A stretch of DNA of 64,000 nucleotides from Chrysemys picta bellii (Eukaryota): positions 2,108,001-2,172,000 of the forward strand of contig NC_088806.1 of assembly GCF_011386835.1 (NCBI RefSeq), written 5' to 3'. The notes beneath the pieces are model-generated. The model was given only the letters and a program-made list of their open reading frames with translations. It had not been told where the DNA came from and searched no databases. Position 1 is the first letter of the stretch. Each line of letters opens with the position of its first letter. Position numbers and translations under genes: made by a program. Below are positions 9,299 to 54,573 of this stretch, one piece after another.

Positions 9299-10554
9299 GT
9301 TTACAGTCTGTGTGATGAGACAACAGATGGATACAGTCAGATAGGGGAGTACGAGGAAACAGGGAGACAATATTGAGTTTGAGGAGGGGTATGAAGGAGG
9401 TTTCGTTCATTTTTTGGGTGGCGCGTACGGAGAGTCTGTTGGAGAAAGCACAATGGTGTGCATTTGAAAATTTAAGCGGTGGTTTGGAAGCTGGCATTGT
9501 GGGCTGATCGGAAGCGAGTGTCGGCATCTTGATAGCAGATAGCTTTCAGGTGGAAAGATCCCATCTCTAATGCAGATATCTTAGAGGTACCTTGGGTAAT
9601 ATCGGCCTCTGTAATAACTTGTCCAGGGAAATAATTGTTCTTGCTCGAGTCCCGCTTCCCTGATCTTTAATGTTTGAACTCTGAGTCAGGGTTGTCTGAT
9701 GCCCTGTTCAGAGTTAGTGCCGGAGTTCCTGCGTTTGTTGGTGCTGCTCCGATTCACCAGTTGTTTTCCAGCACTTAGGAGCATTTGAGCTGCTTTTGTT
9801 GTCGATGGTTGGCATCTTCTGGATGACTTCCAAAACGTCTGTCTCGCAGATCATGTTTTACCATTCCCAGCGGTGAATCCCCCTTAAAGCCCAGCGAGTC
9901 AGAAAAGCACCTGAAGTGAAACTTGTCCCATTTCAGGCTGTGTATTCAGAACAAAGGAAAAGAAAGCTAGCTATGGGGCTGAGATTCTGATCTTGCTCCC
10001 TCTAACCTTGGGCCGTGGCTTTATTTCTCTGTGCCTCCCTTCCCTATATGTAAAAACCTCAGATCTCCTGAGGAATTCTCAGTTTCTTGATGGTTTCCAA
10101 TCAAGACTGTTTAGGCTAAAGATACGTTTTAGGCAGGCACAAGTTACTGGACTCAGGATACTGGATGAAACTGAAATGCCTCCGATATACAGGTCGTGCT
10201 AGGTGATCTAATGGTCCTTTCCGGCCTTAAACTCTCTGAACTTAACTTCGGTGCTGTCATTGTTTGTTTCTATATTATCACTCCCATCCCGTAATATCTG
10301 AGCGCCTCCTGGAAAGAGATACTATTTCCCTCCCTTCCATAGGATAAAGCTATTTTCATTTTGTGGGTGAGGAAACCGAGGCACAGACAGTTAAGTGGCT
10401 TTCCCAGAGTCAGAGCTGGGAATCTACCCCAGACCAGAGTCTCTATCCAGAGCCTTAATCATAAGCCCGTTTGAAGAATTAGCGTCTGAGTGGGGGGGTA
10501 TGGGGAGGTGTCTCTCTAAGCACCTGTTCACCCGTGCAACCAAGGCATTCCTGT

Positions 10555-10713
10555 CATAGAATCACAGACTATCAGGGCTGGAAGGGACCTCAGGAGGTCT
10601 CTAGTCCAACCCCCTGCTCAAAGCAGGACCAATCCCCAGACAGATTTTTGCCCCAGATCCCTAAATGGCCCCCTCAAGGATTGAACTCACAACCCAGGGT
10701 TTAGCAGGCCAAT
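10555..10713 (-). mobile_element. Tortoise-type tRNA-derived SINE with CR1 3' tail (5'-truncated)
   Basis: Near-identical to the reverse complement of 16323-16505; CR1-type tail at the left end. Confidence 0.85.
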
Positions 10714-12379
10714 CCCTGGTATCAGACTCCAAATGAGTATGTCCAGAAGGTGTTGACTGGGGGGGTTAAAACAGCCGGAAAAGGGAATTGGCTCTGGATT
10801 TTGTAGTCCCTATAAAAAATAAAATGATAAATACTGTAGCAATCATCACTCTTTTGTTTTGTTTTGGGCAGTGTTTAGCAGCCCAACTGGGATGAGGGCC
10901 CCATCCTACATAACACAGAATATATTGTAATGCCTTTCTGGAAATCAACGGTGGTGCCTTATCTGGAGATGACCTTAAAAAGGAGGTGGCAGAGTTAGAG
11001 GGGGTTCAGAGAAGGGCGGTGAAAATGATCGATAGCCTGGCTTACATGAAGAGAAATGAAGGCCAGAATGGCCCATCAGCTCATTAGCCCGCCCTTTCCA
11101 TCACCGGCCACTGAACCCCGCTGTCCCCCCTGTATTGAGCTGATGCCCTGGATTATATTAAAGCGTTACAGCCCTCGGGAGGTCAGACTGTTGTGTGCCA
11201 CAGGCAGAGAATATGAGCTGACTGAGGTGACACCTGTACCTAAGGCAGGGAATTAATTAGGTGAGATGTACCCAGATTATCCTAGCAAGCAACCTGCCCC
11301 CCCAAGCTGAAGAGGAAGGTGAAAGCCCCCAAGGGTCCCTGTCAATCTAACCTGGGGGAAGATTCCTTCCCACCCCTGAAAATGGTCATCAGTTTGTTGT
11401 GGGATTGTTACCCGAGGAAAGGGAGGAGTTAAGAGAACACAAGTCTGTAACGTAATGACGGGGAAAGAGACGGTAGAGCGGGAGTTTCTCTTCCTTGTCT
11501 CTCAAAACCACGGCAAGGGGACACCGAGCGAAACGGAATGGCGGCAAACGCAAAAGTGAGCAAAGGAAATGATTTCGCCCCCCCACGAGGCGTGTGATTA
11601 GCTTGTGGCACTCGCTGCCACATGAAATCAGTGAGGCCAAGAACGTAGAGTCCGAGTTTTTAAGGCCGGGAGGGATTTTATTCAGGAGCGCATCCCTGCT
11701 CTTGCAGCAGACGGGTCTTGAGGCTTTTAACAGCGTGCTAGCGACAAACAGGCAGCTGTTGGCCGGGGTGGGCGGCGGTGCCGGGAGAGCGTCTCTCTCG
11801 GCACCTGTTAGTCCCGTCACCGGTTGGACTGGGGAGGCATTCTTGTCCCTGGCCTCAGACTCCAAATGCAGAACAAGATCGCCTGCCCCCACCGCACCTC
11901 GCAGAGTCTCCTGGGAGATGCTGATGGCTACAATCAAATAGCCCTAATCAGGAGTAGCGCCAGGTGCTGGGTGGGCCTCCTGGCCGAGATCTGGGCAGGC
12001 TGCCCCCCATTGGGCTGGGCACTCCACAGCTGCAGCGAAAGACAGCTAACAATCGAAATAGACAAAAGACTTTTAAATGAGGAACTGAAGCCAAACACAG
12101 CATCGGTGGCAGAGCCCGGTTCCGAGCCCAATCCTGACAACACATCCTGGGGATTCTAGCCGAAACTTTCAAGTGGCTAGGAGATTGGGGGGAGGGGGGG
12201 AGGGGCTGATTCTGCAGAAAGTCCAGCGCACCCACCAAAACTTGCCCTGCACTTCCTGAAAACCAGGGCGCCCTGTGAAGATGCGTCAAGCAGGGAGAGG
12301 GGGAAAGTACGACAGTCTAAAACCCTAATCACTGTTTGGGGGAGGGAGGATGGTTATAAATGGAGCGCTGGATTGATAC

Positions 12380-12580
12380 CATCTAGCTCTTAGATATAGC
12401 ATTTTTCCTTACTAGACTTCAAAGCTCTTTACAAGGGAGGTCAGGGGTGTCGTACCCATTTTACATATGGGGAAACGGAGGCACAAGGCCCATGTGGTTT
12501 GCCCAAGGGGGTGAAAGGGGTAGCAGCATAGGTCCCCCATATTCCCCCTAGAGATCTGGGGGGCTGGGGTGTGTCTGCAT
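12380..12580 (-). mobile_element. MIR/CORE-SINE-like fragment
   Basis: CCCATTTTACATATGGGGAAACGGAGGCACA...GGTTTGCCCAAGG. Confidence 0.5.
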
Positions 12581-13205
12581 GAATGAAGCAGCAGGTCTGC
12601 TGTGCCTCCCCCCTCAACGCCACACAGAGCCCTCTGCTGGGATAGGGTTGGCTGGGGGGGTGTGGGGGAGCAGTGCTGCAGGGTTTGGAATTGACACCCC
12701 ATTGAAATGCATGGGACAGTTCCCCTTGCTGAGAGGGATTGGTTCAGGCTCTCTGCAGACTCAGGCAGCCCGGCTGAGTGAGTTATCCTTGGGGCAGTTC
12801 ACCCTTCTCTGAGTTATAGTTTCAGGCAGACGTCGCTGTGTCCATCACACTCCGGTCACGTGTTCGGGTGTTTCTTCACAACCGTGAGAGCTAGAAACTT
12901 AATTAAAAAAAAAAAAACGAAACCCTAAATGCTGCTAAAATCATTTGACTCCAGGAACCAGGGCTCGGGGCACAAGGCTGTAATGCTGAGCTCCTAATTC
13001 TGCACATGGGCGGTGTGTGGCTGGCTGCAGATACAGCAGATTCTGCTTATTAGCAACCCCTTGGTTGCCAGCAGAAAGTTGCAATTATCCACCGATCCCT
13101 GCTACTGCCCTGCCCATGATGAAGTGGTTAATATCCAGGTTTGCTGTCAAACGGAACGTGCTGCCCTGAGGATCGCTCATGCTTTCTTCTGTTCTCCCTC
13201 CGCAG

Positions 13206-16200
13206 GGTTTCGTGAAAGATGTGCACGAAGACTCGGTCACGATATCCTTCGAGAACAAGTAAGTATCCGCCGGAGACTCCTGGTGAGAGGGAGCGGTCCT
13301 GGGCCTAGCCTCCGTTTGTCCTCGTTCCATCTGGGGGAGAACTGAGACCCGCTCCTGTAGGAGGGAACTGAGACGTTTTCAGACCGAGGCCATTGCGGTC
13401 GCAGATCCCAATCCTACCTAACTCTGCATCTCCTTTGAACAATTGTCAGCTCTTTTCAGTGGCTGCTTTTCTGTGTCGAAAATAGTTAGGCCCTACAGCC
13501 AAGTTGGTGGCAGACCTGGGGATAGAACCCAGGTGTCCTGGCCCCCCCAGTCCCTTCCTGTGACTACCCATTAGACCCCCGTGCGCCTTCCAGAATTGGG
13601 GGATATCGTCCGGGGTTCCTGACTCCTAGCCCACCCGTGCTAACCCACTAGACCATTGGTTCCCAAACTAGGGGGTGTGAAGAAATTCCAAGGGGGGCGC
13701 GAGGCTGCCTGGCCCTTGAGCTCCCGGCCGGGGAGGTTAGCCCCTGGTCCCTCCCCTCCCCTGCAGCTACGCCGGTGCACGGGCAGCACAGCTTGTGCTT
13801 GCCCACCTCCCAAGCTTTCCAATAAGCCAGTCCTGACGCTCTGAGCGGCCTGGTAGGGAGGTGGGCAGAGTGGGGGTTGGATAAGGGGCAGGAGGTCCCC
13901 GGGGGGCAGTCAGGGGACAGGGAGCGGTTGGATGGGGCGTAGGTTCTGAGGGGGCGGGGAGGAGACAGAGTGGGGGGATTGGATAGGCGTGGGAGTCCCG
14001 GGGGGGCCTGTCGGGGTGGGGGTGTGGATAGGGGTTGGGGCAGTCAGGAGACAGGGAGCAGGGGGGCTTGGATAGGGGGTGGGGTCCCGGGGGATCTCGG
14101 GAGGGGGCTGGTCAGGGGACAAGGAGGGGAGGTTTGGATAGGGGGTGGGGTCCCAGGAGGGGGTGGTCAGGGGACAGGGAGAAGAGGGGGTTGGATAGGC
14201 GTGGGAGTCCGGGGGGGGGGGGGGGGGGGCTGTGGATAGGGGTCGGGGCAGTCAGGAGACAGGGAGTAGGGAGTGGGGTCCCGGGGGATCCCGGGAGGGG
14301 GATGGTCAGGGGACAAGGAGCAAGGGGGGTTGGATAGGGGGTGGGGTCCCAGGAGGGGGCAGTCAGGGGACAAGGATCAGGGGCGGTTGGGTGATGGTAA
14401 AGGAGAGGTGGGGGGTGTGAGGGTTTCTCGAAAATTAAAAAGAGGGCGTGATGCCTCCTGCCACTTCCCCTCAACGGCAGGCTGGAGGTATCCAATCGTC
14501 TATTAAGATCGTTAGCGGGACCGGCGTGCGCGGAACTTCGGCGCGCCGCTGCGGGCAAGCTGTTGCTTTCGGTTCCGTGGCCCTGGTGCAAGCGAGTGGA
14601 TTGTAAATGTCAACCCTACGCTGTTCCGCGGTAGGAGGGTTGTTAGCGTGCGGCTGTAGGGCCGATGGGCACCTCAGCCGACCCCGCTGGAGCCGGTGCA
14701 GGGTGGAAATGCAGGGATGCCACAGTCCCCGCTTCAGAGCCCTAAATAAAGCTGCTGCACTCAAGGTATCTGACACGGGGCCATGAGGCCCAGCATAACT
14801 AGCAGGCTGCCGCTTTTCCAAATTTAGTTCCTGCTGTTTGTGGCATGCGAATGAAACTGACTCACTCTTAATAAGCCAGCCGCCCGCCCCCGGGAATGCC
14901 TCTAGATTGGCAGCTGTCACTCTACCGCGTGGCGGGATTGTGTGGATTGATGCTAGGGCTGAGATCTCAGGGCCGCATTGTGCTAAGCGCTGTCTCTACA
15001 GGTACCGAGCTGCTCCCCTGTGAAATGTTTCTCTTTCCGACCGTCCGGGTTCCTTCGGTGATGTTAGTTGAGCGTTTGTGTCTCCCGACATCAGTGACTA
15101 GGAGGAAGCAGCGTCATTAGGAGCGTGTTTGTTGGCAGACCTCTCGGTGCACAGTGGGAAAGGAAAGGCAGACGGCCCGGTTTTTAAAACCCGGCCGTCT
15201 GCGTGCAGGAATATCAGAGCCCTTAAACGCAGCTTGGTAGGTAGCTGAGAATGCAGATGGCATGGCAGACAGGCCAACCCTGAGAGGCTGCCACCTCTGG
15301 GGTGTGCCATCTGTTCAGCCAGCACTGCGATGCGGCCACCTCTGGGGTGGAAGGGGGTAGGGCAGGAAGCAAAGAATATTCTCTGCCCCAAACTGTGCAG
15401 GGGAGATTGGGGTTTAAACAGGAGTCCAATTGCTCTGTTTCGATCTACTTTGCCTGGCGTGTGGCTCTTTAACCGGGGAACTGGAAATGTTTCTGAACCA
15501 GTAACAGGCGAAACGGGGTTTAAATCAACTTACGCCACAAACAAACCGCTTTAAAAGCAGCTACAGGCCCTTGCTGTCTCTCTTAGCCGATGTGTAAGTA
15601 AAAGACCCCGGTCCCTACACGGCTTCTGAGTGGATTTCTCTCGTTCGACAGCTGATCGCAGGCAATCGACCTTTCCACATTTTAAAGCTTGGAGGCGCTG
15701 CCTGTTGGATTGAACCTAGTTGAGCAGGTGCCGGTTTTCCTTGCATTTCTGCGCTTGCCTGGCTGATTTCAGGGCATCGTGTTCGCTCGGGGGCTCTATT
15801 TCGGCTCGACCGGTGAAAACTAGTAACGCTGGAGGACTGCCAGCTAGAGCAGCGGCCGGCGCTTCAGCACTCTGCAGCCAGCCTGCTGCTCCGCGATAGC
15901 TCAGCTGTCCGTAGTTAGGACGGTAGTGTAATTAACCATGCAAATCCCAGGGTCATTAGCCTGCTCGCACCTAGATGGTGAGATTACAGCACTGTCACCA
16001 GTTCCTAGAGCCTGCTGGACACCCGGGTCAAATGCTACGCCGACTCCCTCTGCTTCTTGGCTGTGATTCTGTCTAAGCTGGGTGGGATGAGCCGCATAGA
16101 TCCGAGCAGTCCACTGAGTGTCGAGTGCACTCCGTTCCTCAAATACCTCGGTTGGCTGCGGTGTCCTTATGGGGTTTCGAGCCGCGTTGCTGAGCAGGTG

Positions 16201-25967: not shown

Positions 25968-28596
25968 ATGGCCGAGGGGCAGGGCGCGGCGGCGGGGGGC
26001 GACCCCCCGGACAAGGTGAAGCGGCCCATGAACGCCTTCATGGTGTGGTCCAGCGGGCAGCGCCGGCGCCTGGCACAGGAGCACCCCAAGATGCACAACT
26101 CGGAGATCTCCAAGCGCCTGGGGGCCGCCTGGCGCCGCCTGCCCGAGGCGGAGAAACGCCCGTTCGTGGAGGAAGCCAAGCGGCTCCGGGCCCGGCACAT
26201 GCGGGGACTATCCTGACTACAAGTACCGACCCCGGCGCAGGGCCGGGCCCCCGCCAAGGAGCCGCCGCCGGGGGGCCGCCCGCCACCCCAGCTGCCTGCC
26301 ACCCGGGCCTGGGGCTACGGCGAGCCCCTGGGCTACCAGCCGGCCCGCTACCCACCGTGCCCGGCTGCCGCGGGATACGGGAACGCAGCCGGAGGGTACA
26401 GGTGGGTCCCGCCCGCGCTTCCTGTCCCTGCTCCCCCGTCCCCTCGGGTGTATGGGAGACCCCCAACGGTGCCCCCTTACTGGGGAAATGGGGGGGATTA
26501 GCAAGGGGCGGGGGGGCTGCTACATTCCCTCTTTCCCCAGGCCGGGCATGGTTGAAATTAGGGCCGGCTGAGGGGTCTGTGTATAACCAACCCCAGAGGT
26601 GGCTGCATCTCAGCATTGGGTGAGGGGTCCCCGGGTAACCAGCCGCCCCACCCCAGAGGTGGGCGCATCTCAGTGCTAGGCACAGGGGGGGAACAAACAC
26701 CAGGTTCAGGTGCTGGTTGGGACCAAGCGGGCACCAGCCCCAGAATTTGCATGTTAACTGTTGTTAACCAGGTGAGTCAGTGCCAGCTGCTGAGGGCATG
26801 ATGGGGCACCAGTCCTTTGGTATGTGAACCCAGGAGTCCTGGCTCCCAGCTCCCCCTGCTCTAACCACCAGCCCCCACTCCCCTCCCAGAGCCGGGGAGA
26901 GAACCCAGCAGTCCTGGCTCCCTGGTGTGCCAGGATATGCCCACCCCGCCCAGGGCCCTAGGGCTTTGGGTCCTGGCCAGGAGCAGGGTGGGGTTGGGTG
27001 CCAGGCAGCACCCGCCCTGTGGCTGGTATTCACCGTGCCCTGAGCAAAGGGTCATGACCCGGCCAGGCCTCATCCAATCCCTGAGTTGGCTCCTCACCGC
27101 AGGGGTGTCTGGGTGCAGGAGCCAGTGCCCAGGGGAGGGGAAACCGAGGCACGAGTCACAGAACCCAGGAATCCTGACTCCCAGCATCCCCTGCTCTAAC
27201 CACTCCATCGCCCACTGACGGAGAAGGGGAGGCCAGCAAGCGCCCAGGACTCCGGGGTTCTCTGGAGGGGAAGGTGGGTGCCAGGACCCATGGGTTCCTG
27301 CCCGCCTGCGGGAGGGAGTGGGCAGGTTGGGGCAGGCCACGGGGGAGCTGCTCACACCCAGAACCGGATTAACAGGCCAGCTGCGGAATGCGGCCCTGGC
27401 TCACCCAGCCCTGGGGGGGGGGGGAGACCTCTTCCTGCAGCTGCAGGGCGGTTCCCCCCCCCCCCCAAATAACATTGTCCAGAGCTCGCAGAGAACCCAG
27501 GGGTCCAGGCTCCCAGCCCTCTCAGAGGGGAGTGGGGGCTGGTGGTTGGAGCAGGGGGGCTGGGAGCCAGGACTCCTGGGTTCTCTCCCCGGCTCTGGGA
27601 GGGGAGTGGGGGCTGGTGAGTTAGAGCAGGGGGGGCTGGGAGCCAGGACTCCTGGGTTCTCTCCCTGGCTCTGGGAGGGGAGTGGGGGCTGGTGGGTTAG
27701 AGGAGGGGGGCTGTGAGCCAGGACTCCTGGGTTCTCTCCCCGGCTCTGGGAGGGGAGCAGGGGCTGGTGGTTAGAGCAGGGGGGCTGGGAGCCAGGACTC
27801 CTGGGTTCTCTCCCCAGCTCTGGGAGGGGAGCGGGGGCTGGTGGGTTAGAGCAGGGGGGGCTGGGAGCCAGGACTCCTGGGTTCTCTCCCCGGCTCTGGG
27901 AGGGCAGTGGGGGCTAGTGGATTAGAGCAGGGGGGCTGGGAGCCAGGGCTCCTGGGTTCTCTCCCCGGCTCTGGGAGGGGAGTGGGGGCTAGTGGATTAG
28001 AGCAGGGGGGCTGGGAGCCAGGGCTCCTGGGTTCTCTACCCGGCTCTGGGAGGGCAGTGGGGGCTGGTGGTTAGAGCAGGGGGGCTGGGAGCCAGGGCTC
28101 CTGGGTTCTCTCCCCAGCTCTGGGAGGGGAGTGGGGGCTGGTGGGTTAGAGCAGGGGGGGCTGGGAGCCAGGACTCCTGGGTTCTCTCCCCGGCTCTGGG
28201 AGGGGAGCAGGGGCTGGTGGGTTAGAGCAGGGGGCGCTGGGAGCCAGGACTCCTGGGTTCTCTCCCCGGCTCTGGGAGGGCAGTGGGGGCTGGTGGATTA
28301 GAGCAGGGGGGCGCTGGGAGTCAGGACTCCTGGGTTCTCTTCTCTCCTCATTCTGCAACTGTAATTATCCAGCTGGTTAACCCCTCTTCTCTCCCCCCCC
28401 ACCCCCCACAGTGGCCTGTCCTATGGCCCCCCGATGCCCTACAAGCAAGACCCTGCCCCCCACCCGCCGGGGGGTGCTGCCGCCCGATTTCCGCGACATG
28501 ATGGCTGCCTACGGGCTGCAGGCCTGCGACGTGGGCGAGGGCTTCCCGCCGCTGCCCTACGAGCCCCCCGGGCCGGCACCGCTGACGCCCCTCTAG
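25968..28596 (+). CDS. SOX15: SRY-box transcription factor 15 (SoxG/sox19-type), two exons; three homopolymer indels in this assembly
   Basis: Exon 1 25968-26401: MAEGQG...[65 protein letters not shown], then [12 protein letters not shown] after a +1 G. Exon 2 28412-28596 ends ...[13 protein letters not shown]. Apparent indels near 26203-26206 (+1), 26248-26252 (-1) and 28469-28474 (+1). Position between FXR2 and MPDU1 as in human. Confidence 0.88.
27500..28345 (+). repeat. Minisatellite family A (~75-bp unit), about 11 copies in the SOX15 intron
   Basis: Unit GGGAGCCAGGACTCCTGGGTTCTCTCCCCGGCTCTGGGAGGGGAGTGGGGGCTGGTGGTTAGAGCAGGGGGGCT. Also found at ~29555-29765, 31575-32075, 37200-37385, 41900-42040, 43990-44650, 45340-45635, 48130-48490, 62500-62760 and 63730-64000. 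Confidence 0.92.
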
Positions 28597-33200: not shown

Positions 33201-35253
33201 CGCCCTGGGGCCGGGTGGGAGCCGGTGCCCCCTAGAGGGGACAGGCCCTGCCCCCATTCCCCGCTCCCCCCTGAGCCAGCCAATCCCCGCCCTGGGGTTG
33301 GGGGGGAGCCCGGCGCCCCCCAGAGGGGACAGGCCCCTGCCCCATTCCCCGCCCCCCCTGAGCCAGCCAGTCCCCGTCCTGGGGCCGGGTGGGAGCCAAT
33401 GCCCCCCCAGAGGGGCCAGGCCCCCTGCCCCATTCCCCGCCCCCCCCGAGCCAGCCAGTCCCTGCCCCTGGGGCCGGGGGGGAGCCGGCGCCCCCCTAGA
33501 GGGGACAGCCCCCCTGCCCCATTCCCCGCCCCCCTGAGCCAGCCAGTCCCTGCCCTGGGGCCGGGGGGGGAGCCGGCGCCCCCCTAGAGGGGACAGCCCC
33601 CTGCCCCATTCCCCGCCCCCCTGAGCCAGCCAGTGCCTGCCCTGGGGCCGGGGGGGGGAGCCTAGCGCCCCCTAGAGAGGACAGGCCCCCTGCCCCCATT
33701 CCCCGCCCAGAGAGGGAGCCGGGTCCGTACCCATCAGCGACCCCCGCGACGATGGCGAGTCCCAGCCCTTTGCTGATCACGATCTTCAGGCAGGGAACTG
33801 GATGAAAACAGAGAGGGAGAAGGGGGGGTGGGGGGCGTCCAAGTCAGGCCACCAGCGACCCTTGGCCTCCACAGTGGAGTTTATGCCCCCCGGGAACCTC
33901 ACATCCTCCCCACCTGGGGATTTCACCGGCCCCCGCAACCCTTCGGCCTCTTGGGGTGTCCTTAGCCGCCTGCCCCCTTTGCCCCTTCCCCAGCAGCACC
34001 ATGGCCGCCCTCTGCCCCCAGCCAGCGTCTACTGCCCCCCTGGATATCCCCGGGACCCCGCTCCATGCTGACCTCCTACCGGTCCCCGTCCCTCATTCCT
34101 CTACAACCTGCCTCCCCCCCACGGGCCAGCTCCCCTGGGCCCCCCATGTCAGGTGTTTCTCTGGGCATCCCTGCACCCACTCCCCCAGCCCTCTGCGTTA
34201 TGGCTCCCCCGACCCCCTGACGTCTCGGGGTGACTCCGGTTCCCTGTGCGCTGGGCTCCCCCCAGCTCCTTCCCACCCCCAGCTTGCCCCCTTCCCTCCA
34301 GGCCTCGGCCCCCTAGGAGTGCCTGGCTCCCACCCCCCCTCAATTTCCCCCTTGGTCCCCATGGTAGCTACTGCCCTGCCCCACTGAGCCCCCCCCCTAC
34401 CCCATCGCCGCCCAACCAACCCCCACTGCTCCCCCGGCACCCTCACCCTACCCCATTGTCCCCTACCCAACCCCCACTGCTCCCCCAGCCCCCCGACCCC
34501 CAACCAACCCCCACTGCTCCCCCAGCCTCCCTACCCCACCGACCCCCAACCAACCCCCACTGCTCCCCCAGCCCCCCGACCCCCAACCAACCCCCACTGC
34601 TCCCCCAGCCCCCCCGACCCCCAACCAAGCCCACTGCTCCCCCAGCCACCCCTACCCTCTACCCCATTGTCCCCTACCCAACCCCCACTGCTCCCCCAGC
34701 CCCCCGACCCCCAACCAACCCCCACTGCTCCCCCGTCACCCCTACCCCACCGACCCCCAACCAACCCCCACTGCTCCCCGAGCCACCCTACCCCCACGCC
34801 CCTGTCCAATTGCTCCAAACAACCCACACTGCGCCTCCATTGTCCCCCCACCTAAGTGGGAGGCAGTGGCCGGATGTGTCATCCCAGGGGAGCGGTCTGA
34901 GAATTGGGGTCACCCTTCCCCCTGGAACCCCACTTCTGGGGCACTTCCGCCCCTCACGAGCATGGCGGCGGCACGCCTCAAGCAAGACTTCCGCCCCCGC
35001 ACCAACATGGCGGCTCCACGTCGTACTTCCGCCCCGCACCAACATGGCGGTGGCACGCGGCCCTTCCGCCCCCGCACCTATGGAGCGCCGGAGGGCTGCA
35101 GCCTTGCTTTGCCATGCCGACCAGGGGGTGTGGTCCGGGCGGGAGAGAGGCGCGCGCTCACCGTGCAGCAGGTTGAAGCGGAGGAAAAGCTCGTCGTAGC
35201 AGCGCTCGGGCAGCAGGTGCGGGACCCAGCAGCCCCTGCAGCGCCGCCGCCAT
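30300..35253 (-). CDS. MPDU1: Mannose-P-dolichol utilization defect 1 (PQ-loop protein), seven exons; three +1 homopolymer indels in this assembly
   Basis: Exons in minus-strand order: 35253-35162, 33797-33731, 32305-32172, 31492-31407, 31308-31190, 30762-30652, 30428-30300 (TAG). Peptides [93 protein letters not shown] and ETGDPLMA match MPDU1. Exons 1-3 each need one G removed (C-runs at 35225-35227, 33741-33745 and 32272-32277). Confidence 0.93.
32335..33705. repeat. Minisatellite family B (~87-bp unit), about 16 copies in MPDU1 intron 2
   Basis: Unit ...GGGAGCCGGCGCCCCCTAGAGGGGACAGGCCCCTGCCCCATTCCCCGCCCCCCTGAGCCAGCCAGTCCCCGCCCTGGGGCCGGGT. Also found at ~30965-31185, 39545-39785 and 62960-63270. 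Confidence 0.92.
34400..34800. repeat. C-rich tandem repeat (CCCCACTGCTCCCCCAGCC...CCAACCAA) in MPDU1 intron 1
   Basis: About 10 degenerate units visible directly. Confidence 0.8.
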
Positions 35254-35864
35254 TTTGAAAAATGGCGACACTCCCACACCGGCTTTGGCGGCGCTTCCGC
35301 CTTCATGGTGCCAGTGTTCCTACGGCGCAGGCGCGGAGGCGCCCGCGGATCCACTCACTGCGCACGCGCCAGCCGCCCCCGGAGTCGGTGCGCGCGCGCG
35401 GGAACCTCCCTGAGTTACACGCCTTGTGCGCACGCGCCCGCACTCCCACCCGCAGATTCCCCCCCTCCGCAGTAGGCAGGCGCCTGTTTCGCGCCCGCTC
35501 GCTGCGGCGCATGCGCACACGGAGGGGGGAGACAAAGGGGGAAGCGCGGGCAAAGCCTAGTATGCGCCCATGTGTCTGATGGGGCACGCATGCGCCCAGC
35601 CCTTCCACCGTCCCCCATTTCCTCCTCGCGCATGCGCCCAGCCCTTCCACCGTCCCCCATTTCCTCCTCGCGCATGCGCCCAGCCCTTCCACCGTCCCCT
35701 GTCCTCCTCGCGCATGCGCCGTTCCCCCCTCAACACTCTCCCATTCCTCCCCGCGCATGTGCTCTTTCCTCAAACCCTCCCCTTCTTTCCCTTCCCGCGC
35801 ATGCGCCCTAGCGCCCCTCCCCCCCACTCCGTCACCGCCTTGACCAAACTTTGGCCAACCCAAG
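35254..35864. promoter_or_regulatory. CpG-island bidirectional promoter between MPDU1 and the Harbinger-derived gene
   Basis: Divergent ATGs about 610 bp apart; multiple (G)CGCATGCGC NRF1-type motifs; YY1-type motifs at both start codons. Confidence 0.7.
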
Positions 35865-37198
35865 ATGGCCGCACCCAGCTCCGCCATCTTGCCCGCTCCC
35901 TGCCCTGAGCCGGGGGGCCCGTGGCCCTTTGCCCTCCTCTACTACCTGCGGCTGCAACGGGCCGCCGCCTGCGGGAGGCCGCCCGCCGCCACCGGGCGCC
36001 CGCCCCACCGCCGGGCCCGGGCCCGCTGGGGCCGCGCCGCTTCGCCCCTGCTCTGGCTGGCGGGGACCCCGGCGTCCGGGCCCCGGCCCCCGCCCGGCCG
36101 GGCCTCACCGCTCCTACCCAGCCGCCACCACGCCAAGCCACCCGCCCCGGCCCGGGAGCGGCGGCTGTGGAGCAAGGCCCGGAGCTCGGCCTTCTGGGGA
36201 CACGGTGCGGGCCAAGGCCTTCGGGCCCGGCGAGTGGGCCGAGAACTTCCGCCTGGGCCCGGCCACCTTCGACTACCTCTGCGGGCGCCTGCGAGGGGCC
36301 ATCCAGCGGCGGGACACCAACATGCGCCGGGCCATCCCCGCCGAGGTCCGCCTGGCCATGACCCTGTGGCGCCTGGGTGCATGCACCGAGTACCGGGCCG
36401 TGGAGCAGCAGTTCGGCGTCTCCCGCTCCACCGTCTGCAAGATCCTGCGCGACGTCTGTGAGGCCGTGGTGGCCATCCTCACCCCGGCTTACGTGGCCGC
36501 CCCCGCCGGGCCCCGGGCCGCTGGCTTCCCCGCCCCACCGCAGCTGGCCGGCGTGCTGGGGGCCCTGCACATCCCCATCCGGGCCCCCAACGAGAACGCC
36601 GCTGGGTACTTCAACCGCCGGGGCTGGCACTCGGTGGTGCTGCAGGCTGCCGTCGACGCCCGCGGCTGCTTCTGGGACGTCAACGTCGGCTGCCCGGGGA
36701 GGCAGACCGACGCCCCAAGTGCTCCGGGCCTCCGAGCTCTACCAGCGTGCCCAGCAGGGGGAGCTCTTCCCCGGGGCAGCCCGGGACGTGGGAGGCGTAC
36801 AGGTGCCCGTCTACCTTCTGGGTGGCCCGTCCTACCCACTCCTGCCCTGGCTGATGAGGCCTTACCGGGCCGGGGAGCTCACACCGGCCCAGAGGCGGTT
36901 TAACGAGTACGCCGCTGCCGCCCGCACCGTGGTGGGGGTGGCCTTCGGGCGCCTCAGGGGTCGCTGGCGCTGCCTGCAGAAACGCAACGATACGGACGTC
37001 TCTTTCCTGCCCACCCTGATCGCCGCCTGCTCCACCCTCCACAACGTCTGCGAGATGCACGGCGACGTCTTCCAGCCCCGCTGGATGGTGGAGGAAGAGG
37101 AGGAGGAGGAGGAGGAAGAGCCCTTCGAGGACGGGGAGGGAGAGGAGGGCGCCGCGGCTGAGATCCGTGAAGCGCTGGCTCTGACCTTGCGGGACTGA
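35865..37198 (+). CDS. Intronless PIF/Harbinger transposase-derived protein (HARBI1/ALP1-like, DDE_Tnp_4-type) with degenerate catalytic residues
   Basis: Three frames are joined by +1 homopolymer indels (36196-36199, 36713-36716): RERRLWSKARSSAFW / DTVRAKAFGPGEWAENFRLGPATFDYLC...VEQQFGVSRSTVCKILRDVCEAV...GVLGALHIPIRAP...YFNRRGWHSVVLQAAVDARGCFWDVNVGCPGRQTDA / QVLRASELY...LLGGPSYPLLPWLMRPY...FN...ARTVVGVAFGRLRGRWRCL...ACSTLHNVCE, ending in an acidic tail. Kozak AAGATGG; AATAAA at 37637-37642. Confidence 0.85.
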
Positions 37199-38454
37199 GG
37201 GATAGAACCCAGGAGTCCTGGCTCCCAGCCCCCTCCCTGCTCTAACCCACCAGACCCCACTCCCCTCCCAGAGCCGGGGAGAGAACCCAGGAGTCCTGGC
37301 TCCCAGCCCCCTCCCTGCTCTAACCCACCAGACCCCACTCCCCTCCCAGAGCCGGGGAGAGAACCCAGGTGTCCTGGCTTCCAGCCTTCCTGCTTAATCT
37401 GCTGAAGGTTCCCGGCCACAACCTGAAATTGCCTCTCCTGTGGGTGGGGGTAGGGAGGCAGGTGAAGTGAGGGTGCCAGGCAGGTGTGTGGGTAGGGGCT
37501 GGGTGTCAGAACTGGGGTGTGGGAGGGGACCTGGGACTTTGAAACCAGGCTCGGGAAGGGGCAGTTGAAGTAGGGGGTGGGCAGTGGGGGGGGGGGGTAT
37601 TGGGAGGAGCCGGACGCCTGGATTCTCTGTAGCCACAATAAACTAAAACTTCAACCCAAAGGAGCTGTGCTGTAACTGTCCGCCAACACCTGACCCTTTT
37701 CTCTGCCCCACTCCCACCCCATAGCTGCCTGGTCAGCCCTAGCCTGGCTCGTTCAGCAGCTCTGGCTGGCTGGCTGGCCTTCCAGATGGACAGATGGACA
37801 GCAAGGAGGACATGCAGGGAGGGGCTGTATCTGTCTGTCCAGCCAGTCTACCCATCCAGAGGTGGCCGCATCTCAGTGCTGGGCGCAGGGTCCCTGTGTA
37901 ACCAGCCTCCCCCCGCCCCAGAGGTGGCCCCATCTTTATAAATGCCGATGGAATAAAGGACTTGTGGAGGGGGGCGGGGCTTGCTGCAGGACTCTTGAAA
38001 AGGGGGCGTGGTTTAAAGGGCTCAGGGAGAATGGGATCCATGGGGGGTGGAGCTAAAGAGCAAACTCATACCGGAGGCGTGGATTAGTCATGGAAGTTAG
38101 AACAGGGTGTGGTTTGTGAGGCAAGGGGCGTGGCTTGATCATGGATCCTAGAAAGGGGCGTGGCCTGAGGGTGCTGCCCCTGTCCCTGCCCTGCAATGAC
38201 AGAAGCGGCCTCGTGACACCCGCACTTCCCCTTAGGAGTCGGGTGGGGCTGTTCCCGCACGCGGCTGAGTTAACGGGACCCTGCTGGGGCCGCCTGGGAG
38301 ACTGGGCACCCCATGGGGAGCTGCCCCCACACCCCAACACTCTCCCTGCAGCCCAGCATCCCTGGGGCCTGTGCGGGAGAGCACCCCCTGCTGAGCCCCA
38401 CTCCCACGAGCACCCCAGCCCTTGTCCTGGACTTATGTTTTCAACAGCCACCGC

Positions 38455-39325
38455 CCCGCCCCAGAGGTGGGCGCATCTCAGCGCCGGGCGAGGGGTCCCT
38501 GTGTAACCGGCCGCCCCACCCCAGAGGTGGGCGCATCTCAGCGCCGGGCGAGGGGTCCCCGTGTAACCAGCCGCCCCCCCCCCCAGAGGTGGGCGCATCT
38601 CAGCGCCGGGCGAGGGGTCCCCGTGTAACCAGCCACCCCCCCCCAGAGGTGGGCGCATCTCAGCACCGGGCAAGGGGTCCCCGTGTAACCAGCCGCCCCC
38701 CCCCCAGAGGTGGGCGCATCTCAGCGCCGGGCGAGGGGTCCCCGTGTAACCAGCCACCCCCCCCCCAGAGGTGGGCGCATCTCAACACCGGGCGAGGGGT
38801 CCCCGTGTAACCAGCCGCCCCCCCCAGAGGTGGGCGCATCTCAGCGCCGGGCGAGGGGTCCCCGTGTAACCGGCCGCCCCGCCCCAGAGGTGGGCGCATC
38901 TCAGCATCGGGCGAGGGGTCCCTGGATAACCAGCCGCCCCGCCCCAGAGGTGGGCGCATCTCAGCGCTGGCCAAGGGGTCCCCGTGTCACCAGCCGCCCC
39001 GCCCCAGAGGTGGGCGCATCTCAGCGCCGGGCGAGGGGTCCCCGTGTAACCGGCCGCCCCGCCCCAGAGGTGGGCGCATCTCAGCGCTGGCCAAGGGGTC
39101 CCCGTGTAACCAGCCGCCCCGCCCCAGAGGTGGGTGCATCTCAGTGCCGGGCGAGGGGTCCCTGTGTAACCAGCCACCCCCCCCCCCCAGAGGTGGGCGC
39201 ATCTCAGCGCCGGGCAAGGGGTCCCCATGTAACCGGCCGCCCCGCCCCAGAGGTGGGCGCATCTCAGCGCTGGCCAAGGGGTCCCCGTGTAACTGGCCGC
39301 GCCCCCCCAGAGGTGGGCGCATCTC
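38455..39325. repeat. Minisatellite family D (~61-bp unit), about 14 copies
   Basis: Unit CCCCAGAGGTGGGCGCATCTCAGCGCCGGGCGAGGGGTCCCCGTGTAACCAGCCGCCCCG. Related units at ~22690-22910, 26590-26680, 44890-45120, 51510-51600 and 52150-52245. Confidence 0.92.
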
Positions 39326-42800: not shown

Positions 42801-44714
42801 TTTAACTCGCCTTCTTTAGGGAACCAAGTCATTTTGCCACCATTAGGGTCCAGAATTAACACCCCCGAAAAATCCAGGTTCGATCCTCCATATTCCAAAG
42901 GATGCAGGCCCCGCAATTACATTGTGCCCTCAAATCCTGCCCCCTAAGTGATCCTCTCTCAGCCGACACCAGCTGCTACATGAAATGTACCATCAGAGTT
43001 AACACCCCATTTAAGAATATAGGTCCTGTGAGATAGAAAGTAGGGGCAAAGCCCCTACCCCAGCTCCCCGCAAAATCCTTCCTGCCTTGTTGTCCAGCCA
43101 CCCACTCTGATGCTATGTTTCATGTAGCAGCAGAGTTGGTGGCTCGTTTCCAATTGTGCCCTCGGTAGGTTTCAGAGTTAACCCCGCTTAACATTCTCTT
43201 GGGGACCAAAAAAATGGACTTTGAGGACGACTCCACAGATTGCGATGGTCTGAAAACGTTGAAATAACCTTGTTGGCAGCCAGGATATTCACAAGACACG
43301 GTGGGTGGGGTTACATCTGTTAGCGGATGATGGATTTATGTGTGTTTTGAAATCAAGTAGGTTTTCTTGCTCATTTTTCACCCAACATTTCAGGGAAAAG
43401 GAACATTGTCCCTGTTTTTTGTGGGGGGCGGGGGGAACTGATGGGGAAACAGAAAAAATCCCATTTTTTTCCACCCCAGATTCAGGCTTTCGTGGCCAAG
43501 TCGGAGCACTATAAATCTTAAAATATTTCCGTTGTCAGAATTGCGTAACGTTAACCTTTGGTTCCATGCAAAAATAAATAAAAATCTCCTCTCTGCTGTG
43601 AAATTTTTGGAGGCTTTGTGCCACCCAGGCGAATCGTCCAAATTTCATTTTTTTTCTGTGCCAAATGTGGAAGGGGGCAATATTTGGTTCCCCACCAAGA
43701 TCTCAAGCAAACCCCGAATGCCCGGCCAGTTTTCTGCTGACTGCTGAAAACAATAACATGGAAATTCAATTTTGGGGGGCTGGGGCGGGGGAAGGGAGCT
43801 TAGCCGCCCCCCACCCACCCCAGTTTAGCCGCCTCCACCAACTTGTTCGGCTTCGGTGAGTGCCGACCCGGCAGGAAATGCCCCTTTTCCCACCCAAATC
43901 TTTGCGGAAAACCAACATTGTTTAAAAATGACCCCGGAGCAAAACAGATTTTATCGCACAGGTGAACAAAGTTAAATGGAAGTTGGTGGGGGCTGGTAGC
44001 CAGGACTCCTGGGTTCTCTCCCCGGCTCTGGGAGGGGAGTGGGGGCTGGTGGGTCAGAGCAGGGGGACTGGGAGCCAGGACTCCTGGGTTCTCTCCCTGG
44101 CTCTGGGAGGGGAGTGGGGGCTGGTGGGTTAGAGCAGGGGGGGGCTGGGAGCCAGGACTCCTGGGTTCTATCCCCGGCTCTGGGAAGGGAGTGGGGGCTG
44201 GTGGTTAGAGCAGGGGGGGCTGGGAGCCAGGACTCCTGGGCTCTATCCCTGGCTCTGGGAAGGGAGTGGGGTACGCTGGGTTAGAGCAGGGGTGCTGGGA
44301 GCCAGGACTCCTGGGTTCTCTCCCCGGCTCTGGGAGGGGAGTGGGGGCTGGGTGCCAGGACTCCTGGGTTCTCTCCCCGGCTCTGGGAGGGGAGTGGGGG
44401 CTGGGCGCCAGGACTCCTGGGTTCTCTTCCCGGCTCTGGGAGGGGAGTGGGGGCTGGGCGCCAGGACTCCTGGGTTCTCTCCCCGGCTCTGGGAGGGGAG
44501 TGGGGTACGGTGGGTTAGAGCAGGGGTGCTGGGAGCCAGGACTCCTGGGTTCTCTTCCCGGCTCTGGGAGGGGAGTGGGGGCTGGGCGCCAGGACTCCTG
44601 GGTTCTCTCCCCGGCTCTGGGAGGGGAGTGGGGTACGGTGGGTTAGAGAGATGCCACCTGTAGAAAAGAGCAGCACCCACCTGCCAGGCAGAGCAGCAGG
44701 GACAGGGTCCTCAT
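39808..44714 (-). CDS. CD68: CD68/macrosialin (signal peptide, mucin domain, LAMP domain, TM helix, GYxxPhi tail), six exons
   Basis: Exons: 44714-44681 (MRTLSLLLCLA), 42610-42051 (CPRHKKSATLVPSFT, Thr/His-rich mucin), 41842-41723 (WGAFAIQPNRTKVSGKC), 41150-41078, 40370-40203 (NANLREFEARMGHSYQCQN), 39947-39808 (LVPIIIGVVLLVLILIIVIAYLVGRRRARGGYQTL*). All phases are compatible; position between MPDU1 and EIF4A1 as in human. Confidence 0.92.
40445..40995. repeat. Degenerate ~20-bp tandem repeat (CCCCAAAGTCACCCC) in CD68 intron 4
   Basis: Directly visible repeated motif. Confidence 0.8.
41270..41715. repeat. Minisatellite family C (~88-bp unit) in CD68 intron 3
   Basis: Unit CCCACAGCGCCCCCTAGCGCCACCCTGGGGCCAGTCCTGCCTGCCAGGGGAGAGCGCCCCCTGCTG...; related copies at ~63470-63605. 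Confidence 0.85.

Positions 44715-47960: not shown

Positions 47961-54573
<6,613 letters not shown>

What the first reader, a model, noticed from the sequence alone, without database searches (positions are those of the whole stretch)
35865..37198. Candidate domesticated, catalytically dead Harbinger transposase gene (HARBI1/ALP1-like) not present at the human locus
Seen: an intronless ~440-codon ORF after correcting two homopolymer +1 indels; the N-terminal ~100 aa may hide further compensating indels. All Harbinger motifs occur in order: RRLWxK.RS..W, ENFR, HTH-like FGVSRSTV, YFNRRGWHS..LQ, YPLLPWLM.PY, FN...R....AFG.L..RW and LHN.C. Three conserved acidic positions are Gly: IDG to LGA (36559-36561), GD to GG (36824-36826) and (I/V)E to VG (36935-36937); only the PG...D aspartate remains. 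No TIRs, TSD or Myb/SANT partner ORF were seen nearby. It has a Kozak start, a poly(A) signal at 37637, GC-rich third positions like its neighbours and a poly-Glu tail. Known: domesticated Harbinger proteins (vertebrate HARBI1 with NAIF1, Arabidopsis ALP1/ALP2 and HDP1/HDP2) pair with Myb/SANT-like proteins, and the plant ones act in chromatin complexes. Human HARBI1 lies on another chromosome, and human CD68 and MPDU1 are adjacent. Inference: an independent domestication giving a nuclease-dead chromatin or adaptor protein.
Basis: partly seen in the sequence, partly recalled or inferred. Interest (0 to 1): 0.85.

Follow-up and report, generated by a model that had tools for sequence, protein, structure and literature searches.

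The report
Ancient nuclease-dead Harbinger-derived host gene
This is a real, intact, expressed single-copy gene that a Harbinger "jumping gene" left beside MPDU1 more than 400 million years ago; it has lost its DNA-cutting residues, and the frameshifts seen in the window are assembly errors.

Summary
Window 35865-37198 encodes a Harbinger (DDE_Tnp_4) transposase-like protein read in three frames.

The frameshifts are not biological. Contigs from four public read sets (two organisms) lack one letter at 36196 and 36713 and more letters in the N-terminal part, always in C or G runs. The net difference of 20 letters restores one open frame.

Evidence that it is a host gene:
- It is single-copy in this genome. 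The next best match is 49% identical, while at least 150 Harbinger matches score 41-48%, and the sampled full-length copies keep D-D-E.
- It is intronless, has no terminal inverted repeats, and has no Myb-like neighbour gene.
- It lies head-to-head with MPDU1 and next to CD68 in turtles and squamates, and next to MPDU1 in frogs and a caecilian.
- A coelacanth protein joins the clade (support 100/98), and the gene tree follows the species tree.
- dN/dS is 0.02-0.19.
- Small RNA-like runs cover only the transcript.

Catalytic decay: the first Asp is lost in all 25 clade members. The second Asp and the Glu were lost later, lineage by lineage.

It shares only 21-28% identity with HARBI1. No mammalian member was retrieved.

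Function as a non-catalytic nuclear adaptor is inferred, not shown. A 2010 Anolis paper noted five such ORFs in one paragraph. This scan has two other notes of nuclease-dead Harbinger genes elsewhere in this genome.

The parts
35865..37198 (+). Whole coding region as written in the assembly: single exon, ATG to TGA. The true gene is about 20 letters shorter, about 437 codons.
   Evidence: One RNA-like contig of 1277 nt is colinear over 35845-37081 and is a net 20 letters shorter. Orthologues are single-exon genes of 435-460 aa.
35865..36197 (+). N-terminal part: a long basic helix, a disordered linker and the RRLWSKARSSAFW motif. In the window it hops between three frames.
   Evidence: tblastn of Lepidochelys P0002 matches all three frames. 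Reads lack letters at 35873, 35932, 36003 (x2), 36045 and 36081. The model shows helix 16-65 at pLDDT about 92.
36199..36711 (+). Middle piece (171 codons, error-free): helix-turn-helix region (FGVSRSTV at 36412-36435) and the first third of the DDE_Tnp_4 domain.
   Evidence: It is 99% identical in protein to Lepidochelys, with dN/dS 0.02. All sampled words are present in read sets.
36713..37195 (+). C-terminal piece (161 codons): the rest of the DDE_Tnp_4 domain, the LHNVC motif, an acidic tail and the last helix.
   Evidence: dN/dS against Lepidochelys is 0.09.
36196..36196 (+). Extra G in a GGGG run: the first frameshift, an assembly error.
   Evidence: Left out in the contigs of all four runs. 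Also absent in Lepidochelys.
36713..36713 (+). Extra C in a CCCC run: the second frameshift, an assembly error.
   Evidence: Left out in the contigs of all four runs. Absent in Lepidochelys and in protein P0001.
36559..36561 (+). First catalytic Asp replaced by Gly (VLGALH in place of IDGxH).
   Evidence: This position is G, A, S or C in all 25 members of the coelacanth-tetrapod clade.
36824..36826 (+). Second catalytic Asp replaced by Gly (LLGGPSYP in place of LLGDPAYP).
   Evidence: Asp is kept only in coelacanth and caecilian.
36935..36937 (+). Catalytic Glu replaced by Gly (VVGVAFG in place of VVECAFG).
   Evidence: Glu is kept in coelacanth, caecilian, Hyla and one snake.
37091..37120 (+). 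Run of ten Glu codons in the acidic, disordered tail.
   Evidence: It differs by 3 nt in length from Lepidochelys. pLDDT is low at residues 395-419.
35507..35806 (.). Shared CpG-rich promoter between MPDU1 and this gene. It holds five exact GCGCATGCGC (NRF1-type) palindromes, partly within a 42-nt tandem repeat.
   Evidence: 5 found against 0.04 expected, and all five in the window lie here. The motif is also present upstream in Lepidochelys (3), Podarcis (3) and Pseudonaja (1). RNA-like contigs begin at 35737-35845.
35163..35253 (-). MPDU1 exon 1, head-to-head with the gene, about 610 nt between the start codons. It is also hit by an extra letter, at 35225.
   Evidence: [18 protein letters not shown] shared with the annotated PQ-loop gene of L011.
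37199..37386 (+). 2.4 copies of a 78-nt unit from a very abundant dispersed repeat, immediately after the stop codon. It breaks all read contigs.
   Evidence: (word depth 1e5-1e6).
37637..37642 (+).
   Evidence: motif present. One search shows no RNA-like contig beyond about 37435, whereas DNA runs cover the region.

Best explanation
SHOWN. The locus is an intact, single-copy, intronless host gene derived from a PIF/Harbinger transposase. It has sat head-to-head with MPDU1, sharing a CpG-island promoter rich in NRF1-type sites, since at least the tetrapod ancestor, and probably since the sarcopterygian ancestor. It evolves under strong purifying selection and is transcribed. The apparent frameshifts are extra letters that the assembly put into C and G runs.

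INFERRED FROM SEQUENCE AND MODEL. The protein keeps the whole Harbinger architecture: a long basic N-terminal helix, the W..RS..W and helix-turn-helix DNA-binding region, an RNase H-like core, an acidic tail and a terminal helix. It cannot cut DNA by the DDE mechanism, because the first metal-binding Asp is missing in every member. The second Asp and the Glu then decayed independently in frogs and amniotes.

INFERRED BY ANALOGY ONLY. Like plant ALP1 and HDP1 and the HARBI1-NAIF1 pair, it most likely works as a non-catalytic nuclear adaptor. It would use its N-terminal and helix-turn-helix part to dock a Myb/SANT-like (Harbinger ORF2-derived) protein or DNA, and its dead core and acidic tail as a protein-binding scaffold.
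For: INTACT GENE. Contigs of 4 runs from 2 organisms omit the extra letters. The net difference of 20 letters equals exactly the shift from the ATG frame to the stop frame. Between 36137 and 37081 only the two sites differ. All 7 sites lie in C or G runs. The error-free stretch has a word share of 1.00 in read sets, against at most 0.76 for the whole region.

SINGLE COPY. There is one match at 100%, and the next best is 49%.

SYNTENY. The order MPDU1(-), gene(+), CD68(-) holds in Lepidochelys, Rhineura and Podarcis. The CD68 side is seen in Pseudonaja, and the MPDU1 side in Bufo, Hyla and Microcaecilia. The window is colinear with L011.

VERTICAL DESCENT. The coelacanth-plus-tetrapod clade has support 100/98, and its topology follows the species tree.

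SELECTION. dN/dS is 0.02 and 0.09 against Lepidochelys and 0.09-0.19 among squamates.

LONG RESIDENCE. GC3 is 0.86-0.95, against 0.62-0.64 in the genome's Harbinger copies.

CATALYTIC RESIDUES. See the table. The genome's own full-length Harbinger copies keep D, D and E.

FOLD. Mean pLDDT is 85 and pTM is 0.75. The best structural matches are ALP1, ALP1-like and HARBI1, with TM by hit of 0.71-0.82.

TRANSCRIPTION. Small RNA-like runs (42-188 million letters, at least 14 samples, 5 studies) hold the gene. Two that were laid cover only about 35737-37430, and one contig is colinear with the genome.

PARTNER LOGIC. In Harbinger elements the Myb-like protein binds the N-terminal end of the transposase, and NAIF1 binds HARBI1 (PMC9392472, citing Sinzelle 2008).
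Against: - No direct evidence of protein, localisation, DNA binding or any partner.
- The one complex prediction tried gave no verdict.
- The RNA status of the runs is the tool's guess, not on record.
- The RNase H-like core is highly conserved despite the dead triad. This could mean a retained non-DDE activity rather than a pure scaffold.
- Synteny for the coelacanth protein could not be checked.
- In the one bird locus fetched, MPDU1 was not among the called neighbours.
- Absence from mammals and crocodilians rests only on their not appearing in protein searches.
Confidence: 0.7

Rival explanations
1. It is a transposon-control factor. The dead transposase competes with active Harbinger transposases for their Myb-like partner or their terminal repeats and so represses transposition, a dominant-negative in the manner of truncated P-element repressors.
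For: It keeps the DNA-binding and partner-binding N-terminal half while the catalytic triad is gone. This turtle genome holds a young Harbinger family: at least 150 matches, with sampled copies 96.5-98.5% alike that mostly keep D-D-E.
Against: The gene is kept under selection in lineages where Harbinger elements are reported extinct (Anolis, PMC3014272) and in birds. It is only 41-49% identical to the genome's current elements and falls in a different clade.
Confidence: 0.12
2. It still has an enzymatic activity on nucleic acids that uses other residues of the conserved RNase H-like core. The name 'putative nuclease' would then be apt.
For: The core is very well conserved and confidently folded. 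Several polar residues near the site are invariant, such as H in LHIPI, WHS and VD. Coelacanth and caecilian keep two of the three acidic residues.
Against: The first Asp is replaced by G, A, S or C in all 25 members. In amniotes all three positions are small or non-acidic. The neighbouring PG..HD motif is also degraded. This stepwise decay is what relaxed constraint on catalysis predicts.
Confidence: 0.1
3. In this species the gene is a real pseudogene: the frameshifts exist in the animal's DNA.
For: The window carries at least 9 frame-breaking letters. The public gene model identical to the window (P0003) had to skip them.
Against: The four read-derived contig sets that were laid, including two of the organism that best holds the window, lack the extra letters wherever they cover them. 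There are no stop codons within the pieces. dN/dS is 0.02-0.09. Protein P0001, 100% identical over the C-terminal piece, reads through the second site.
Confidence: 0.03
4. It is an ordinary, immobile Harbinger transposon copy that happens to lie here.
For: Clear DDE_Tnp_4 homology. The genome is rich in Harbinger copies.
Against: It is single-copy, has no terminal repeats and no Myb-like ORF, and holds the same position in species that diverged more than 300 million years ago. It is under purifying selection, and its gene tree equals the species tree.
Confidence: 0.01

Closest known systems
HARBI1 (vertebrate Harbinger transposase-derived gene; partner NAIF1)
   Same: Both derive from a Harbinger transposase and are single-copy host genes. 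They share the fold (TM by hit 0.78-0.82) and the same HTH plus DDE_Tnp_4 architecture.
   Different: Identity is only 21-28%. HARBI1 is about 349 aa and aligns only from residue 88-115 onward, so it lacks the long N-terminal helix. From the literature and my own knowledge, not tested here: HARBI1 keeps its DDE residues, has introns, lies at another locus and is present in mammals. Swiss-Prot HARBI1 entries for Xenopus laevis and zebrafish appear among the structural matches. Other frogs carry the MPDU1-side gene, so amphibians have both genes.
Arabidopsis ALP1 / ALP1-like (with Myb-like ALP2) and HDP1/HDP2
   Same: These are the best structural matches (TM 0.69/0.75 and 0.67/0.71). They are domesticated Harbinger transposases described as having lost transposition ability and acting as chromatin-complex adaptors with a co-domesticated Myb-like partner (PMC4671723, PMC7282668, PMC5339849).
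   Different: Identity is 21-23%. The plant genes are separate domestications. No partner and no chromatin complex is known for the turtle gene.
Five TIR-less Harbinger ORFs of 442-466 aa in Anolis carolinensis (Novick et al. 2010, PMC3014272)
   Same: The description fits: intact ORFs related to Harbinger transposases, with no terminal repeats or target duplications, proposed as domestications. The Anolis sagrei orthologue found here is 459 aa.
   Different: That paper gives one paragraph, with no loci, orthology, age, catalytic-residue analysis or selection test. Whether this gene is one of the five was not checked.
Active Harbinger transposons of the same genome (436-aa and 442-aa ORF families)
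   Same: 41-48% protein identity and the same domain order.
   Different: They give many matches. Sampled copies of the 436-aa family are 96.5-98.5% alike over about 3 kb. Sampled full-length copies mostly keep D-D-E. GC3 is 0.62-0.64. They fall in a different clade.
Drosophila DPLG genes and insect PIF/Harbinger co-domestications (PMC9710019)
   Same: Recurrent domestication of PIF/Harbinger transposases, some together with the Myb-like partner.
   Different: An unrelated lineage; not compared by sequence here.

Membership tests
PIF/Harbinger transposase superfamily (homology) | DDE_Tnp_4 (PF13359) domain above Pfam's cut-off | tested here: met
   28.1 and 54.5 bits in the two window pieces (cut-off 24.8); 96.9 bits in the intact orthologue P0002.
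PIF/Harbinger transposase superfamily (homology) | N-terminal helix-turn-helix region of Harbinger transposases | tested here: inconclusive
   HTH_Tnp_4 scores only 17-19 bits, below the cut-off of 27. DUF8040 (PF26138) is precomputed on the orthologues. The model shows a helical domain at residues 102-202.
Active Harbinger transposon | Intact D-D-E catalytic triad | tested here: not met
   Gly at all three positions. The first Asp is absent in all 25 clade members.
Active Harbinger transposon | Terminal inverted repeats and a 3-nt target duplication flanking the ORF | tested here: not met
   only short, low-complexity chance pairs. The flanks are the MPDU1 promoter and a dispersed repeat.
Active Harbinger transposon | Second ORF for a Myb/SANT-like protein in the element | tested here: not met
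   window; orthologous loci. For contrast, the amphioxus relative L016 does have a Myb_DNA-bind_4 neighbour.
Active Harbinger transposon | Multiple dispersed near-identical copies | tested here: not met
   one copy; the next best match is 49%.
Domesticated transposase (host gene) | Orthologues at the same genomic position in distant species | tested here: met
Domesticated transposase (host gene) | Purifying selection on the protein | tested here: met
   pairwise NG86 dN/dS is 0.02-0.19 for unsaturated pairs. No codon-model likelihood test was run.
Domesticated transposase (host gene) | Gene tree congruent with species tree | tested here: met
Domesticated transposase (host gene) | Expression | tested here: inconclusive
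   small runs hold it and cover only the transcript, but their RNA status is a guess. No raw reads, strand or tissue information.
HARBI1 orthology group | Close sequence relationship to HARBI1, closer than to transposons | tested here: not met
   21-28% identity to HARBI1 of human, cattle, rat, mouse, Xenopus and zebrafish. This compares with 41-49% to Harbinger transposases. HARBI1 was not placed in the tree.
ALP1-type chromatin adaptor (function) | Physical association with a Myb-like partner and a chromatin complex | not testable with these tools
   One complex prediction gave no verdict. IP-mass spectrometry is needed.

The most novel reading that the evidence does not exclude
The gene is the missing transposase-side half of a co-domesticated Harbinger pair. 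It arose in the sarcopterygian ancestor, the same age the literature gives for the Myb-like gene MSANTD3 (PMC9392472). In non-mammalian tetrapods it would act with MSANTD3, or another orphan MSANTD/NAIF1-type protein, as a chromatin-targeting complex comparable to plant ALP1-ALP2. Mammals would then have lost the transposase half and rewired the pathway.
Probability: 0.12. Interest if true: 0.7.

Novelty: new member of a known kind. Interest (0 to 1): 0.5.

Why it matters
The vertebrate literature searched here lists a single transposase-derived Harbinger gene (HARBI1) beside five or more Myb-like-derived ones (NAIF1, MSANTD1-4), which leaves most of the Myb-like genes without a known transposase-type partner. 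This gene is a second, independently recruited transposase-derived gene.

Three points make it useful:
- It is older than 350-400 million years, is kept in coelacanth, amphibians, turtles, squamates and birds, and is apparently missing in mammals. That absence would explain why human-centred screens missed it.
- It gives a clean natural series of how a DDE site decays after recruitment: first Asp, then second Asp and Glu, independently in frogs and amniotes.
- It gives a candidate partner to test against the orphan MSANTD proteins in chicken or Xenopus.

There is also a practical point. The public gene model that matches this assembly is distorted by homopolymer errors. GC-rich microchromosome genes in this assembly should be read with that in mind.

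Tried and rejected
- PARTNER PREDICTION. One complex prediction was run: the intact turtle orthologue P0002 against the first coding exon of this genome's MSANTD3 (L020). It gave no verdict, so it is not evidence either way. Only exon 1 of MSANTD3 could be referenced, so its C-terminal coiled-coil part was not included. NAIF1 (L019) and MSANTD4 (L021) were not tried because the cap is one job.
- SOLVED STRUCTURES. Sequence search found no match. Foldseek against the PDB found nothing at E <= 0.001, only weak DDE transposase and integrase rows.
- COELACANTH AND FISH SYNTENY. The coelacanth protein P0034 and the Micropterus protein P0044 are not on record in the contig index. The related percomorph gene (Pempheris, L015) has introns and lies next to an RB-family gene, not MPDU1, so it was not counted as an orthologue.
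- BIRD SYNTENY. The one bird locus (L014) showed only a Sad1_UNC neighbour within 10 kb, so bird synteny is unresolved.
- DEEP RELATIONSHIPS. The links between the clade and fish, amphioxus and echinoderm relatives are unresolved (open forks). No donor transposon family can be named.
- HARBI1 IN THE TREE. No HARBI1 sequence was available by reference, so it was not placed in the tree. Only structure-based identities are given.
- YN00 dN/dS. It failed or saturated for distant pairs. Only NG86 values for closer pairs are used.
- LITERATURE. Searches for 'HARBI1-like' and 'zgc 113227' gave nothing relevant.
- REJECTED READINGS. Pseudogene, and plain transposon copy (see rival explanations).
Full report
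WHAT IS IN THE WINDOW

Between 35865 and 37198 on the + strand there is no single open frame. Three overlapping frames together spell a Harbinger transposase-like protein.
- Pfam's DDE_Tnp_4 model is matched at profile positions 4-55 in 36199-36711 and at positions 58-158 in 36713-37195. The two pieces are therefore consecutive parts of one domain in different frames.
- The frame of the ATG at 35865 ends with the Harbinger motif RRLWSKARSSAFW, just before 36197.

THE FRAMESHIFTS ARE ASSEMBLY ERRORS

I laid the contigs of four public runs on 35200-37750. Two were large DNA-type runs of the organism that best holds the window. Two were small RNA-like runs of a second organism.
- All four omit one letter at 35873, 35932, 36196 and 36713. 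The runs whose contigs cover the sites also omit two letters at 36003 and one each at 36045 and 36081.
- Every one of these sites lies in a run of C or G.
- One 1277-nt contig is colinear with 35845-37081 and is a net 20 letters shorter than the window. Since 20 mod 3 = 2, that is precisely the shift needed to go from the ATG frame to the frame of the stop codon.
- The same positions differ from the sea-turtle orthologue. The N-terminal 100 residues of that orthologue are found scattered over all three frames of the window.
- The error-free stretch 36200-36710 has a word share of 1.00 in read sets, whereas the whole region reaches at most 0.76.
- The public protein that is 100% identical to the window (P0003) starts at an upstream ATG (35262) and jumps over 22 residues at the second shift. 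A second model (P0001) reads straight through that site. So the annotation of this gene in this assembly is an artefact of the errors.

I did not write out any corrected sequence. The intact Lepidochelys orthologue P0002 (435 aa, 97% identical over the C-terminal piece) was used wherever a full-length protein was needed.

IT IS A HOST GENE, NOT A TRANSPOSON

Copy number and composition:
- A six-frame search of the window's own 2.37-Gb genome finds one copy at 100%. The next best match is 49%. At least 150 further matches score 41-48%, many with full-length open frames of 436 or 442 codons.
- Those are real transposons. Sampled full-length copies mostly keep GAIDGTHI, PGKVHD, ILGDPAYP and VVECAFGRLKGRW. 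Copies of the 436-aa family are 96.5-98.5% identical over about 3 kb. Their GC3 is 0.62-0.64, against 0.86-0.95 for the gene.

Missing transposon features:
- Around the gene there are no credible terminal inverted repeats.
- No Myb/SANT-like ORF is present. The 2.5 kb up to CD68 hold a dispersed repeat, a 60-nt minisatellite and nothing with a Pfam match.

Synteny:
- The annotated loci of Lepidochelys olivacea, Rhineura floridana and Podarcis lilfordi show the same order and strands: PQ-loop gene (MPDU1, minus), this gene (plus, single exon), Lamp-family gene (CD68, minus).
- Pseudonaja shows the CD68 side.
- Bufo bufo, Hyla sarda and the caecilian Microcaecilia unicolor show MPDU1 directly upstream, head-to-head.
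- The window is colinear with the Lepidochelys locus from SOX15 through MPDU1 and the gene to CD68. MPDU1 exon 1 is recognisable at about 35163-35253 on the minus strand.

AGE AND DESCENT

Profile searches retrieve members from turtles, squamates, birds, many frogs, a caecilian and the coelacanth. No mammal or crocodilian appears.

In a maximum-likelihood tree the coelacanth and tetrapod proteins form one clade (support 100/98). Its branching follows the species tree: coelacanth; then caecilian, frogs and amniotes (that fork is not resolved); then, within amniotes, turtles with birds against squamates. The genome's own transposons and a second ORF (L002) fall in another clade.

The relations of this clade to fish, amphioxus and echinoderm relatives are unresolved. 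One of those relatives, in amphioxus, still has a Myb_DNA-bind_4 gene beside it and looks like a true element.

Synteny dates the gene to the tetrapod ancestor. The coelacanth sequence would push it to the sarcopterygian ancestor, but its locus could not be read.

SELECTION

Pairwise dN/dS (NG86) results:
- 0.02 and 0.09 for the two clean window pieces against Lepidochelys;
- 0.09-0.19 among three squamates;
- 0.17-0.34 for distant pairs, which have saturated dS.

THE CATALYTIC SITE

In an alignment of 47 relatives, most of the transposase-like sequences carry D / D / E at the three columns. In the 25 members of the clade:
- The first Asp is never present. It is G in turtles, squamates and frogs, A or S in birds, S in the caecilian and C in the coelacanth.
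- The second Asp survives only in coelacanth and caecilian.
- The Glu survives in coelacanth, caecilian, Hyla and one snake.
- The PG..HD motif is also degraded.

This pattern says catalysis was lost once, early, and the remaining acidic residues then drifted independently in frogs and amniotes.

FOLD

With the 47-sequence alignment, AlphaFold2 gives a confident model (mean pLDDT 85, pTM 0.75) with these parts:
- a 50-residue basic helix (residues 16-65);
- a disordered linker;
- a helical DNA-binding-type domain (102-202);
- an RNase H-like core (220-390);
- a disordered acidic stretch;
- a final helix.

Among reviewed proteins the best structural matches are Arabidopsis ALP1 and ALP1-like, then HARBI1 of six vertebrates. 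These are followed by IS702, IS112 and IS5 transposases. Identity to HARBI1 is 21-28%, and HARBI1 aligns only from residue 88-115 onward. The gene is therefore neither HARBI1 nor a recent duplicate of it. No solved structure matches.

EXPRESSION AND PROMOTER
- At least 14 small runs (42-188 million letters) from five studies hold 87-100% of the words of the clean stretch. A 2.4-Gb genome could not be assembled from so little DNA.
- The two such runs that I laid cover only about 35737-37430 and nothing upstream or downstream, while the DNA runs cover the flanks. This argues for transcription of an unspliced mRNA that starts 20-130 nt before the ATG.
- The tool nevertheless marks the RNA status as a guess.
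- The contigs break in the abundant repeat right after the stop codon and do not reach the AATAAA at 37637, so the 3' end is open.
- The 610 nt between the two start codons hold all five GCGCATGCGC palindromes of the window (expected 0.04), partly in a 42-nt tandem repeat. The same motif recurs upstream of the orthologues in Lepidochelys, Podarcis and Pseudonaja. A shared bidirectional CpG-island promoter with MPDU1 is the simplest reading.

HOW IT LIKELY WORKS

Shown: an intact, conserved, expressed protein with a Harbinger fold and no DDE site.

Inferred: it binds rather than cuts. In Harbinger elements the Myb-like protein binds the N-terminal end of the transposase and brings it to the nucleus and to DNA. 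NAIF1 does this for HARBI1 (PMC9392472, citing Sinzelle 2008). Plant ALP1 and HDP1 are Harbinger-derived proteins that sit in chromatin complexes with Myb-like partners (PMC4671723, PMC7282668, PMC5339849). The conserved N-terminal helix and helix-turn-helix region of this protein are the natural candidates for such docking.

A candidate partner is MSANTD3, which the literature dates to the same sarcopterygian ancestor. The single complex prediction I could run gave no verdict.

Rival mechanisms are a repressor of active Harbinger elements, or a retained non-DDE activity.

WHAT IS KNOWN
- The 2022 survey of vertebrate Harbinger-derived genes lists only HARBI1 on the transposase side.
- Novick et al. 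2010 noted, in one paragraph, five TIR-less Harbinger ORFs of 442-466 aa in Anolis as probable domestications, without loci or analysis. The Anolis orthologue here is 459 aa and may be one of them.
- NCBI's pipeline names the orthologues 'putative nuclease HARBI1' or 'ALP1-like'.
- I found no paper describing this gene, its position, age, catalytic decay or absence from mammals.
- The scan itself holds two other first-stage notes of nuclease-dead Harbinger genes elsewhere in this genome. I also met one more (L002). Together these fit the idea of a small family of such genes in reptiles.

VERDICT

It is a new, well-supported member of a known kind (domesticated Harbinger transposases) and of moderate interest. 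Its function remains to be tested.

Noticed in passing
G000:C16:3796312-3799794 (L002), about 1.65 Mb from the window on the same contig: A second Harbinger-derived ORF of 440 aa from its first Met, 49% identical to the C-terminal piece of this gene. The first catalytic Asp is replaced by Gly (ALGLTH), while the second Asp and the Glu are kept. GC3 is 0.87. It is sister to the genome's transposon clade, not to the MPDU1-side gene. It is possibly another domesticated paralogue.
   Followed up: partly
Own genome, e.g. L004, L005, L006, L009 (436-aa ORF family) and L010 (442-aa family): At least 150 Harbinger matches. Many have full-length open frames, and sampled copies mostly have an intact D-D-E. 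Four copies of the 436-aa family are 96.5-98.5% identical over 2.9-3.05 kb. This looks like a young, possibly still active DNA transposon family in a turtle.
   Followed up: partly
window 35262-37198 versus proteins P0003 and P0069: The public gene models identical to this assembly are distorted by the homopolymer errors: an upstream false start at 35262, an invented intron over the second shift, or truncation to 291 aa. Many turtle orthologues in the databases are likewise partial (289-312 aa).
   Followed up: yes
window 35225 (MPDU1 exon 1, minus strand): One contig in each of the two DNA runs also omits a letter here. In the window the MPDU1 start (MAAAL...) is out of frame with the rest of exon 1. 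The assembly errors are not confined to the Harbinger gene.
   Followed up: partly
window 34943-35078: Three copies of a 37-45-nt unit containing ACTTCCG (ETS-like) and AACATGGCGGC (YY1-like) motifs, just inside the MPDU1 5' region.
   Followed up: no
window 38451-39325: A 60-nt minisatellite: 14.5 copies, 90% matches, between the gene and CD68. It produces long spurious ORFs on both strands.
   Followed up: no
window 37199-37386, and many other places in the window (e.g. 27519-28340, 43988-44633, 48191-48485): A 78-nt unit of an extremely abundant dispersed repeat (word depth 1e5-1e6 in read sets), tandemly arrayed. It sits directly after the stop codon.
   Followed up: no
Protein cluster of P0022 (carp, Megalobrama, loaches, medaka): DDE-intact Harbinger-type proteins of cypriniforms and medaka fall in one cluster at 90% identity. 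They are also close to an amphioxus protein. This means either extreme conservation or horizontal transfer between fishes.
   Followed up: no
L016 (Branchiostoma lanceolatum), 10001-13813: The amphioxus relative has a convergent 333-aa Myb_DNA-bind_4 gene 640 nt downstream. That is the classic two-gene Harbinger layout.
   Followed up: no
Own genome, L019-L030: Twelve Myb_DNA-bind_5 matches. From their open frames I recognise NAIF1 (L019), MSANTD3 exon 1 (L020) and MSANTD4 (L021), by my memory of the human proteins. Nine more are unnamed and could include partners of the Harbinger-derived genes.
   Followed up: partly
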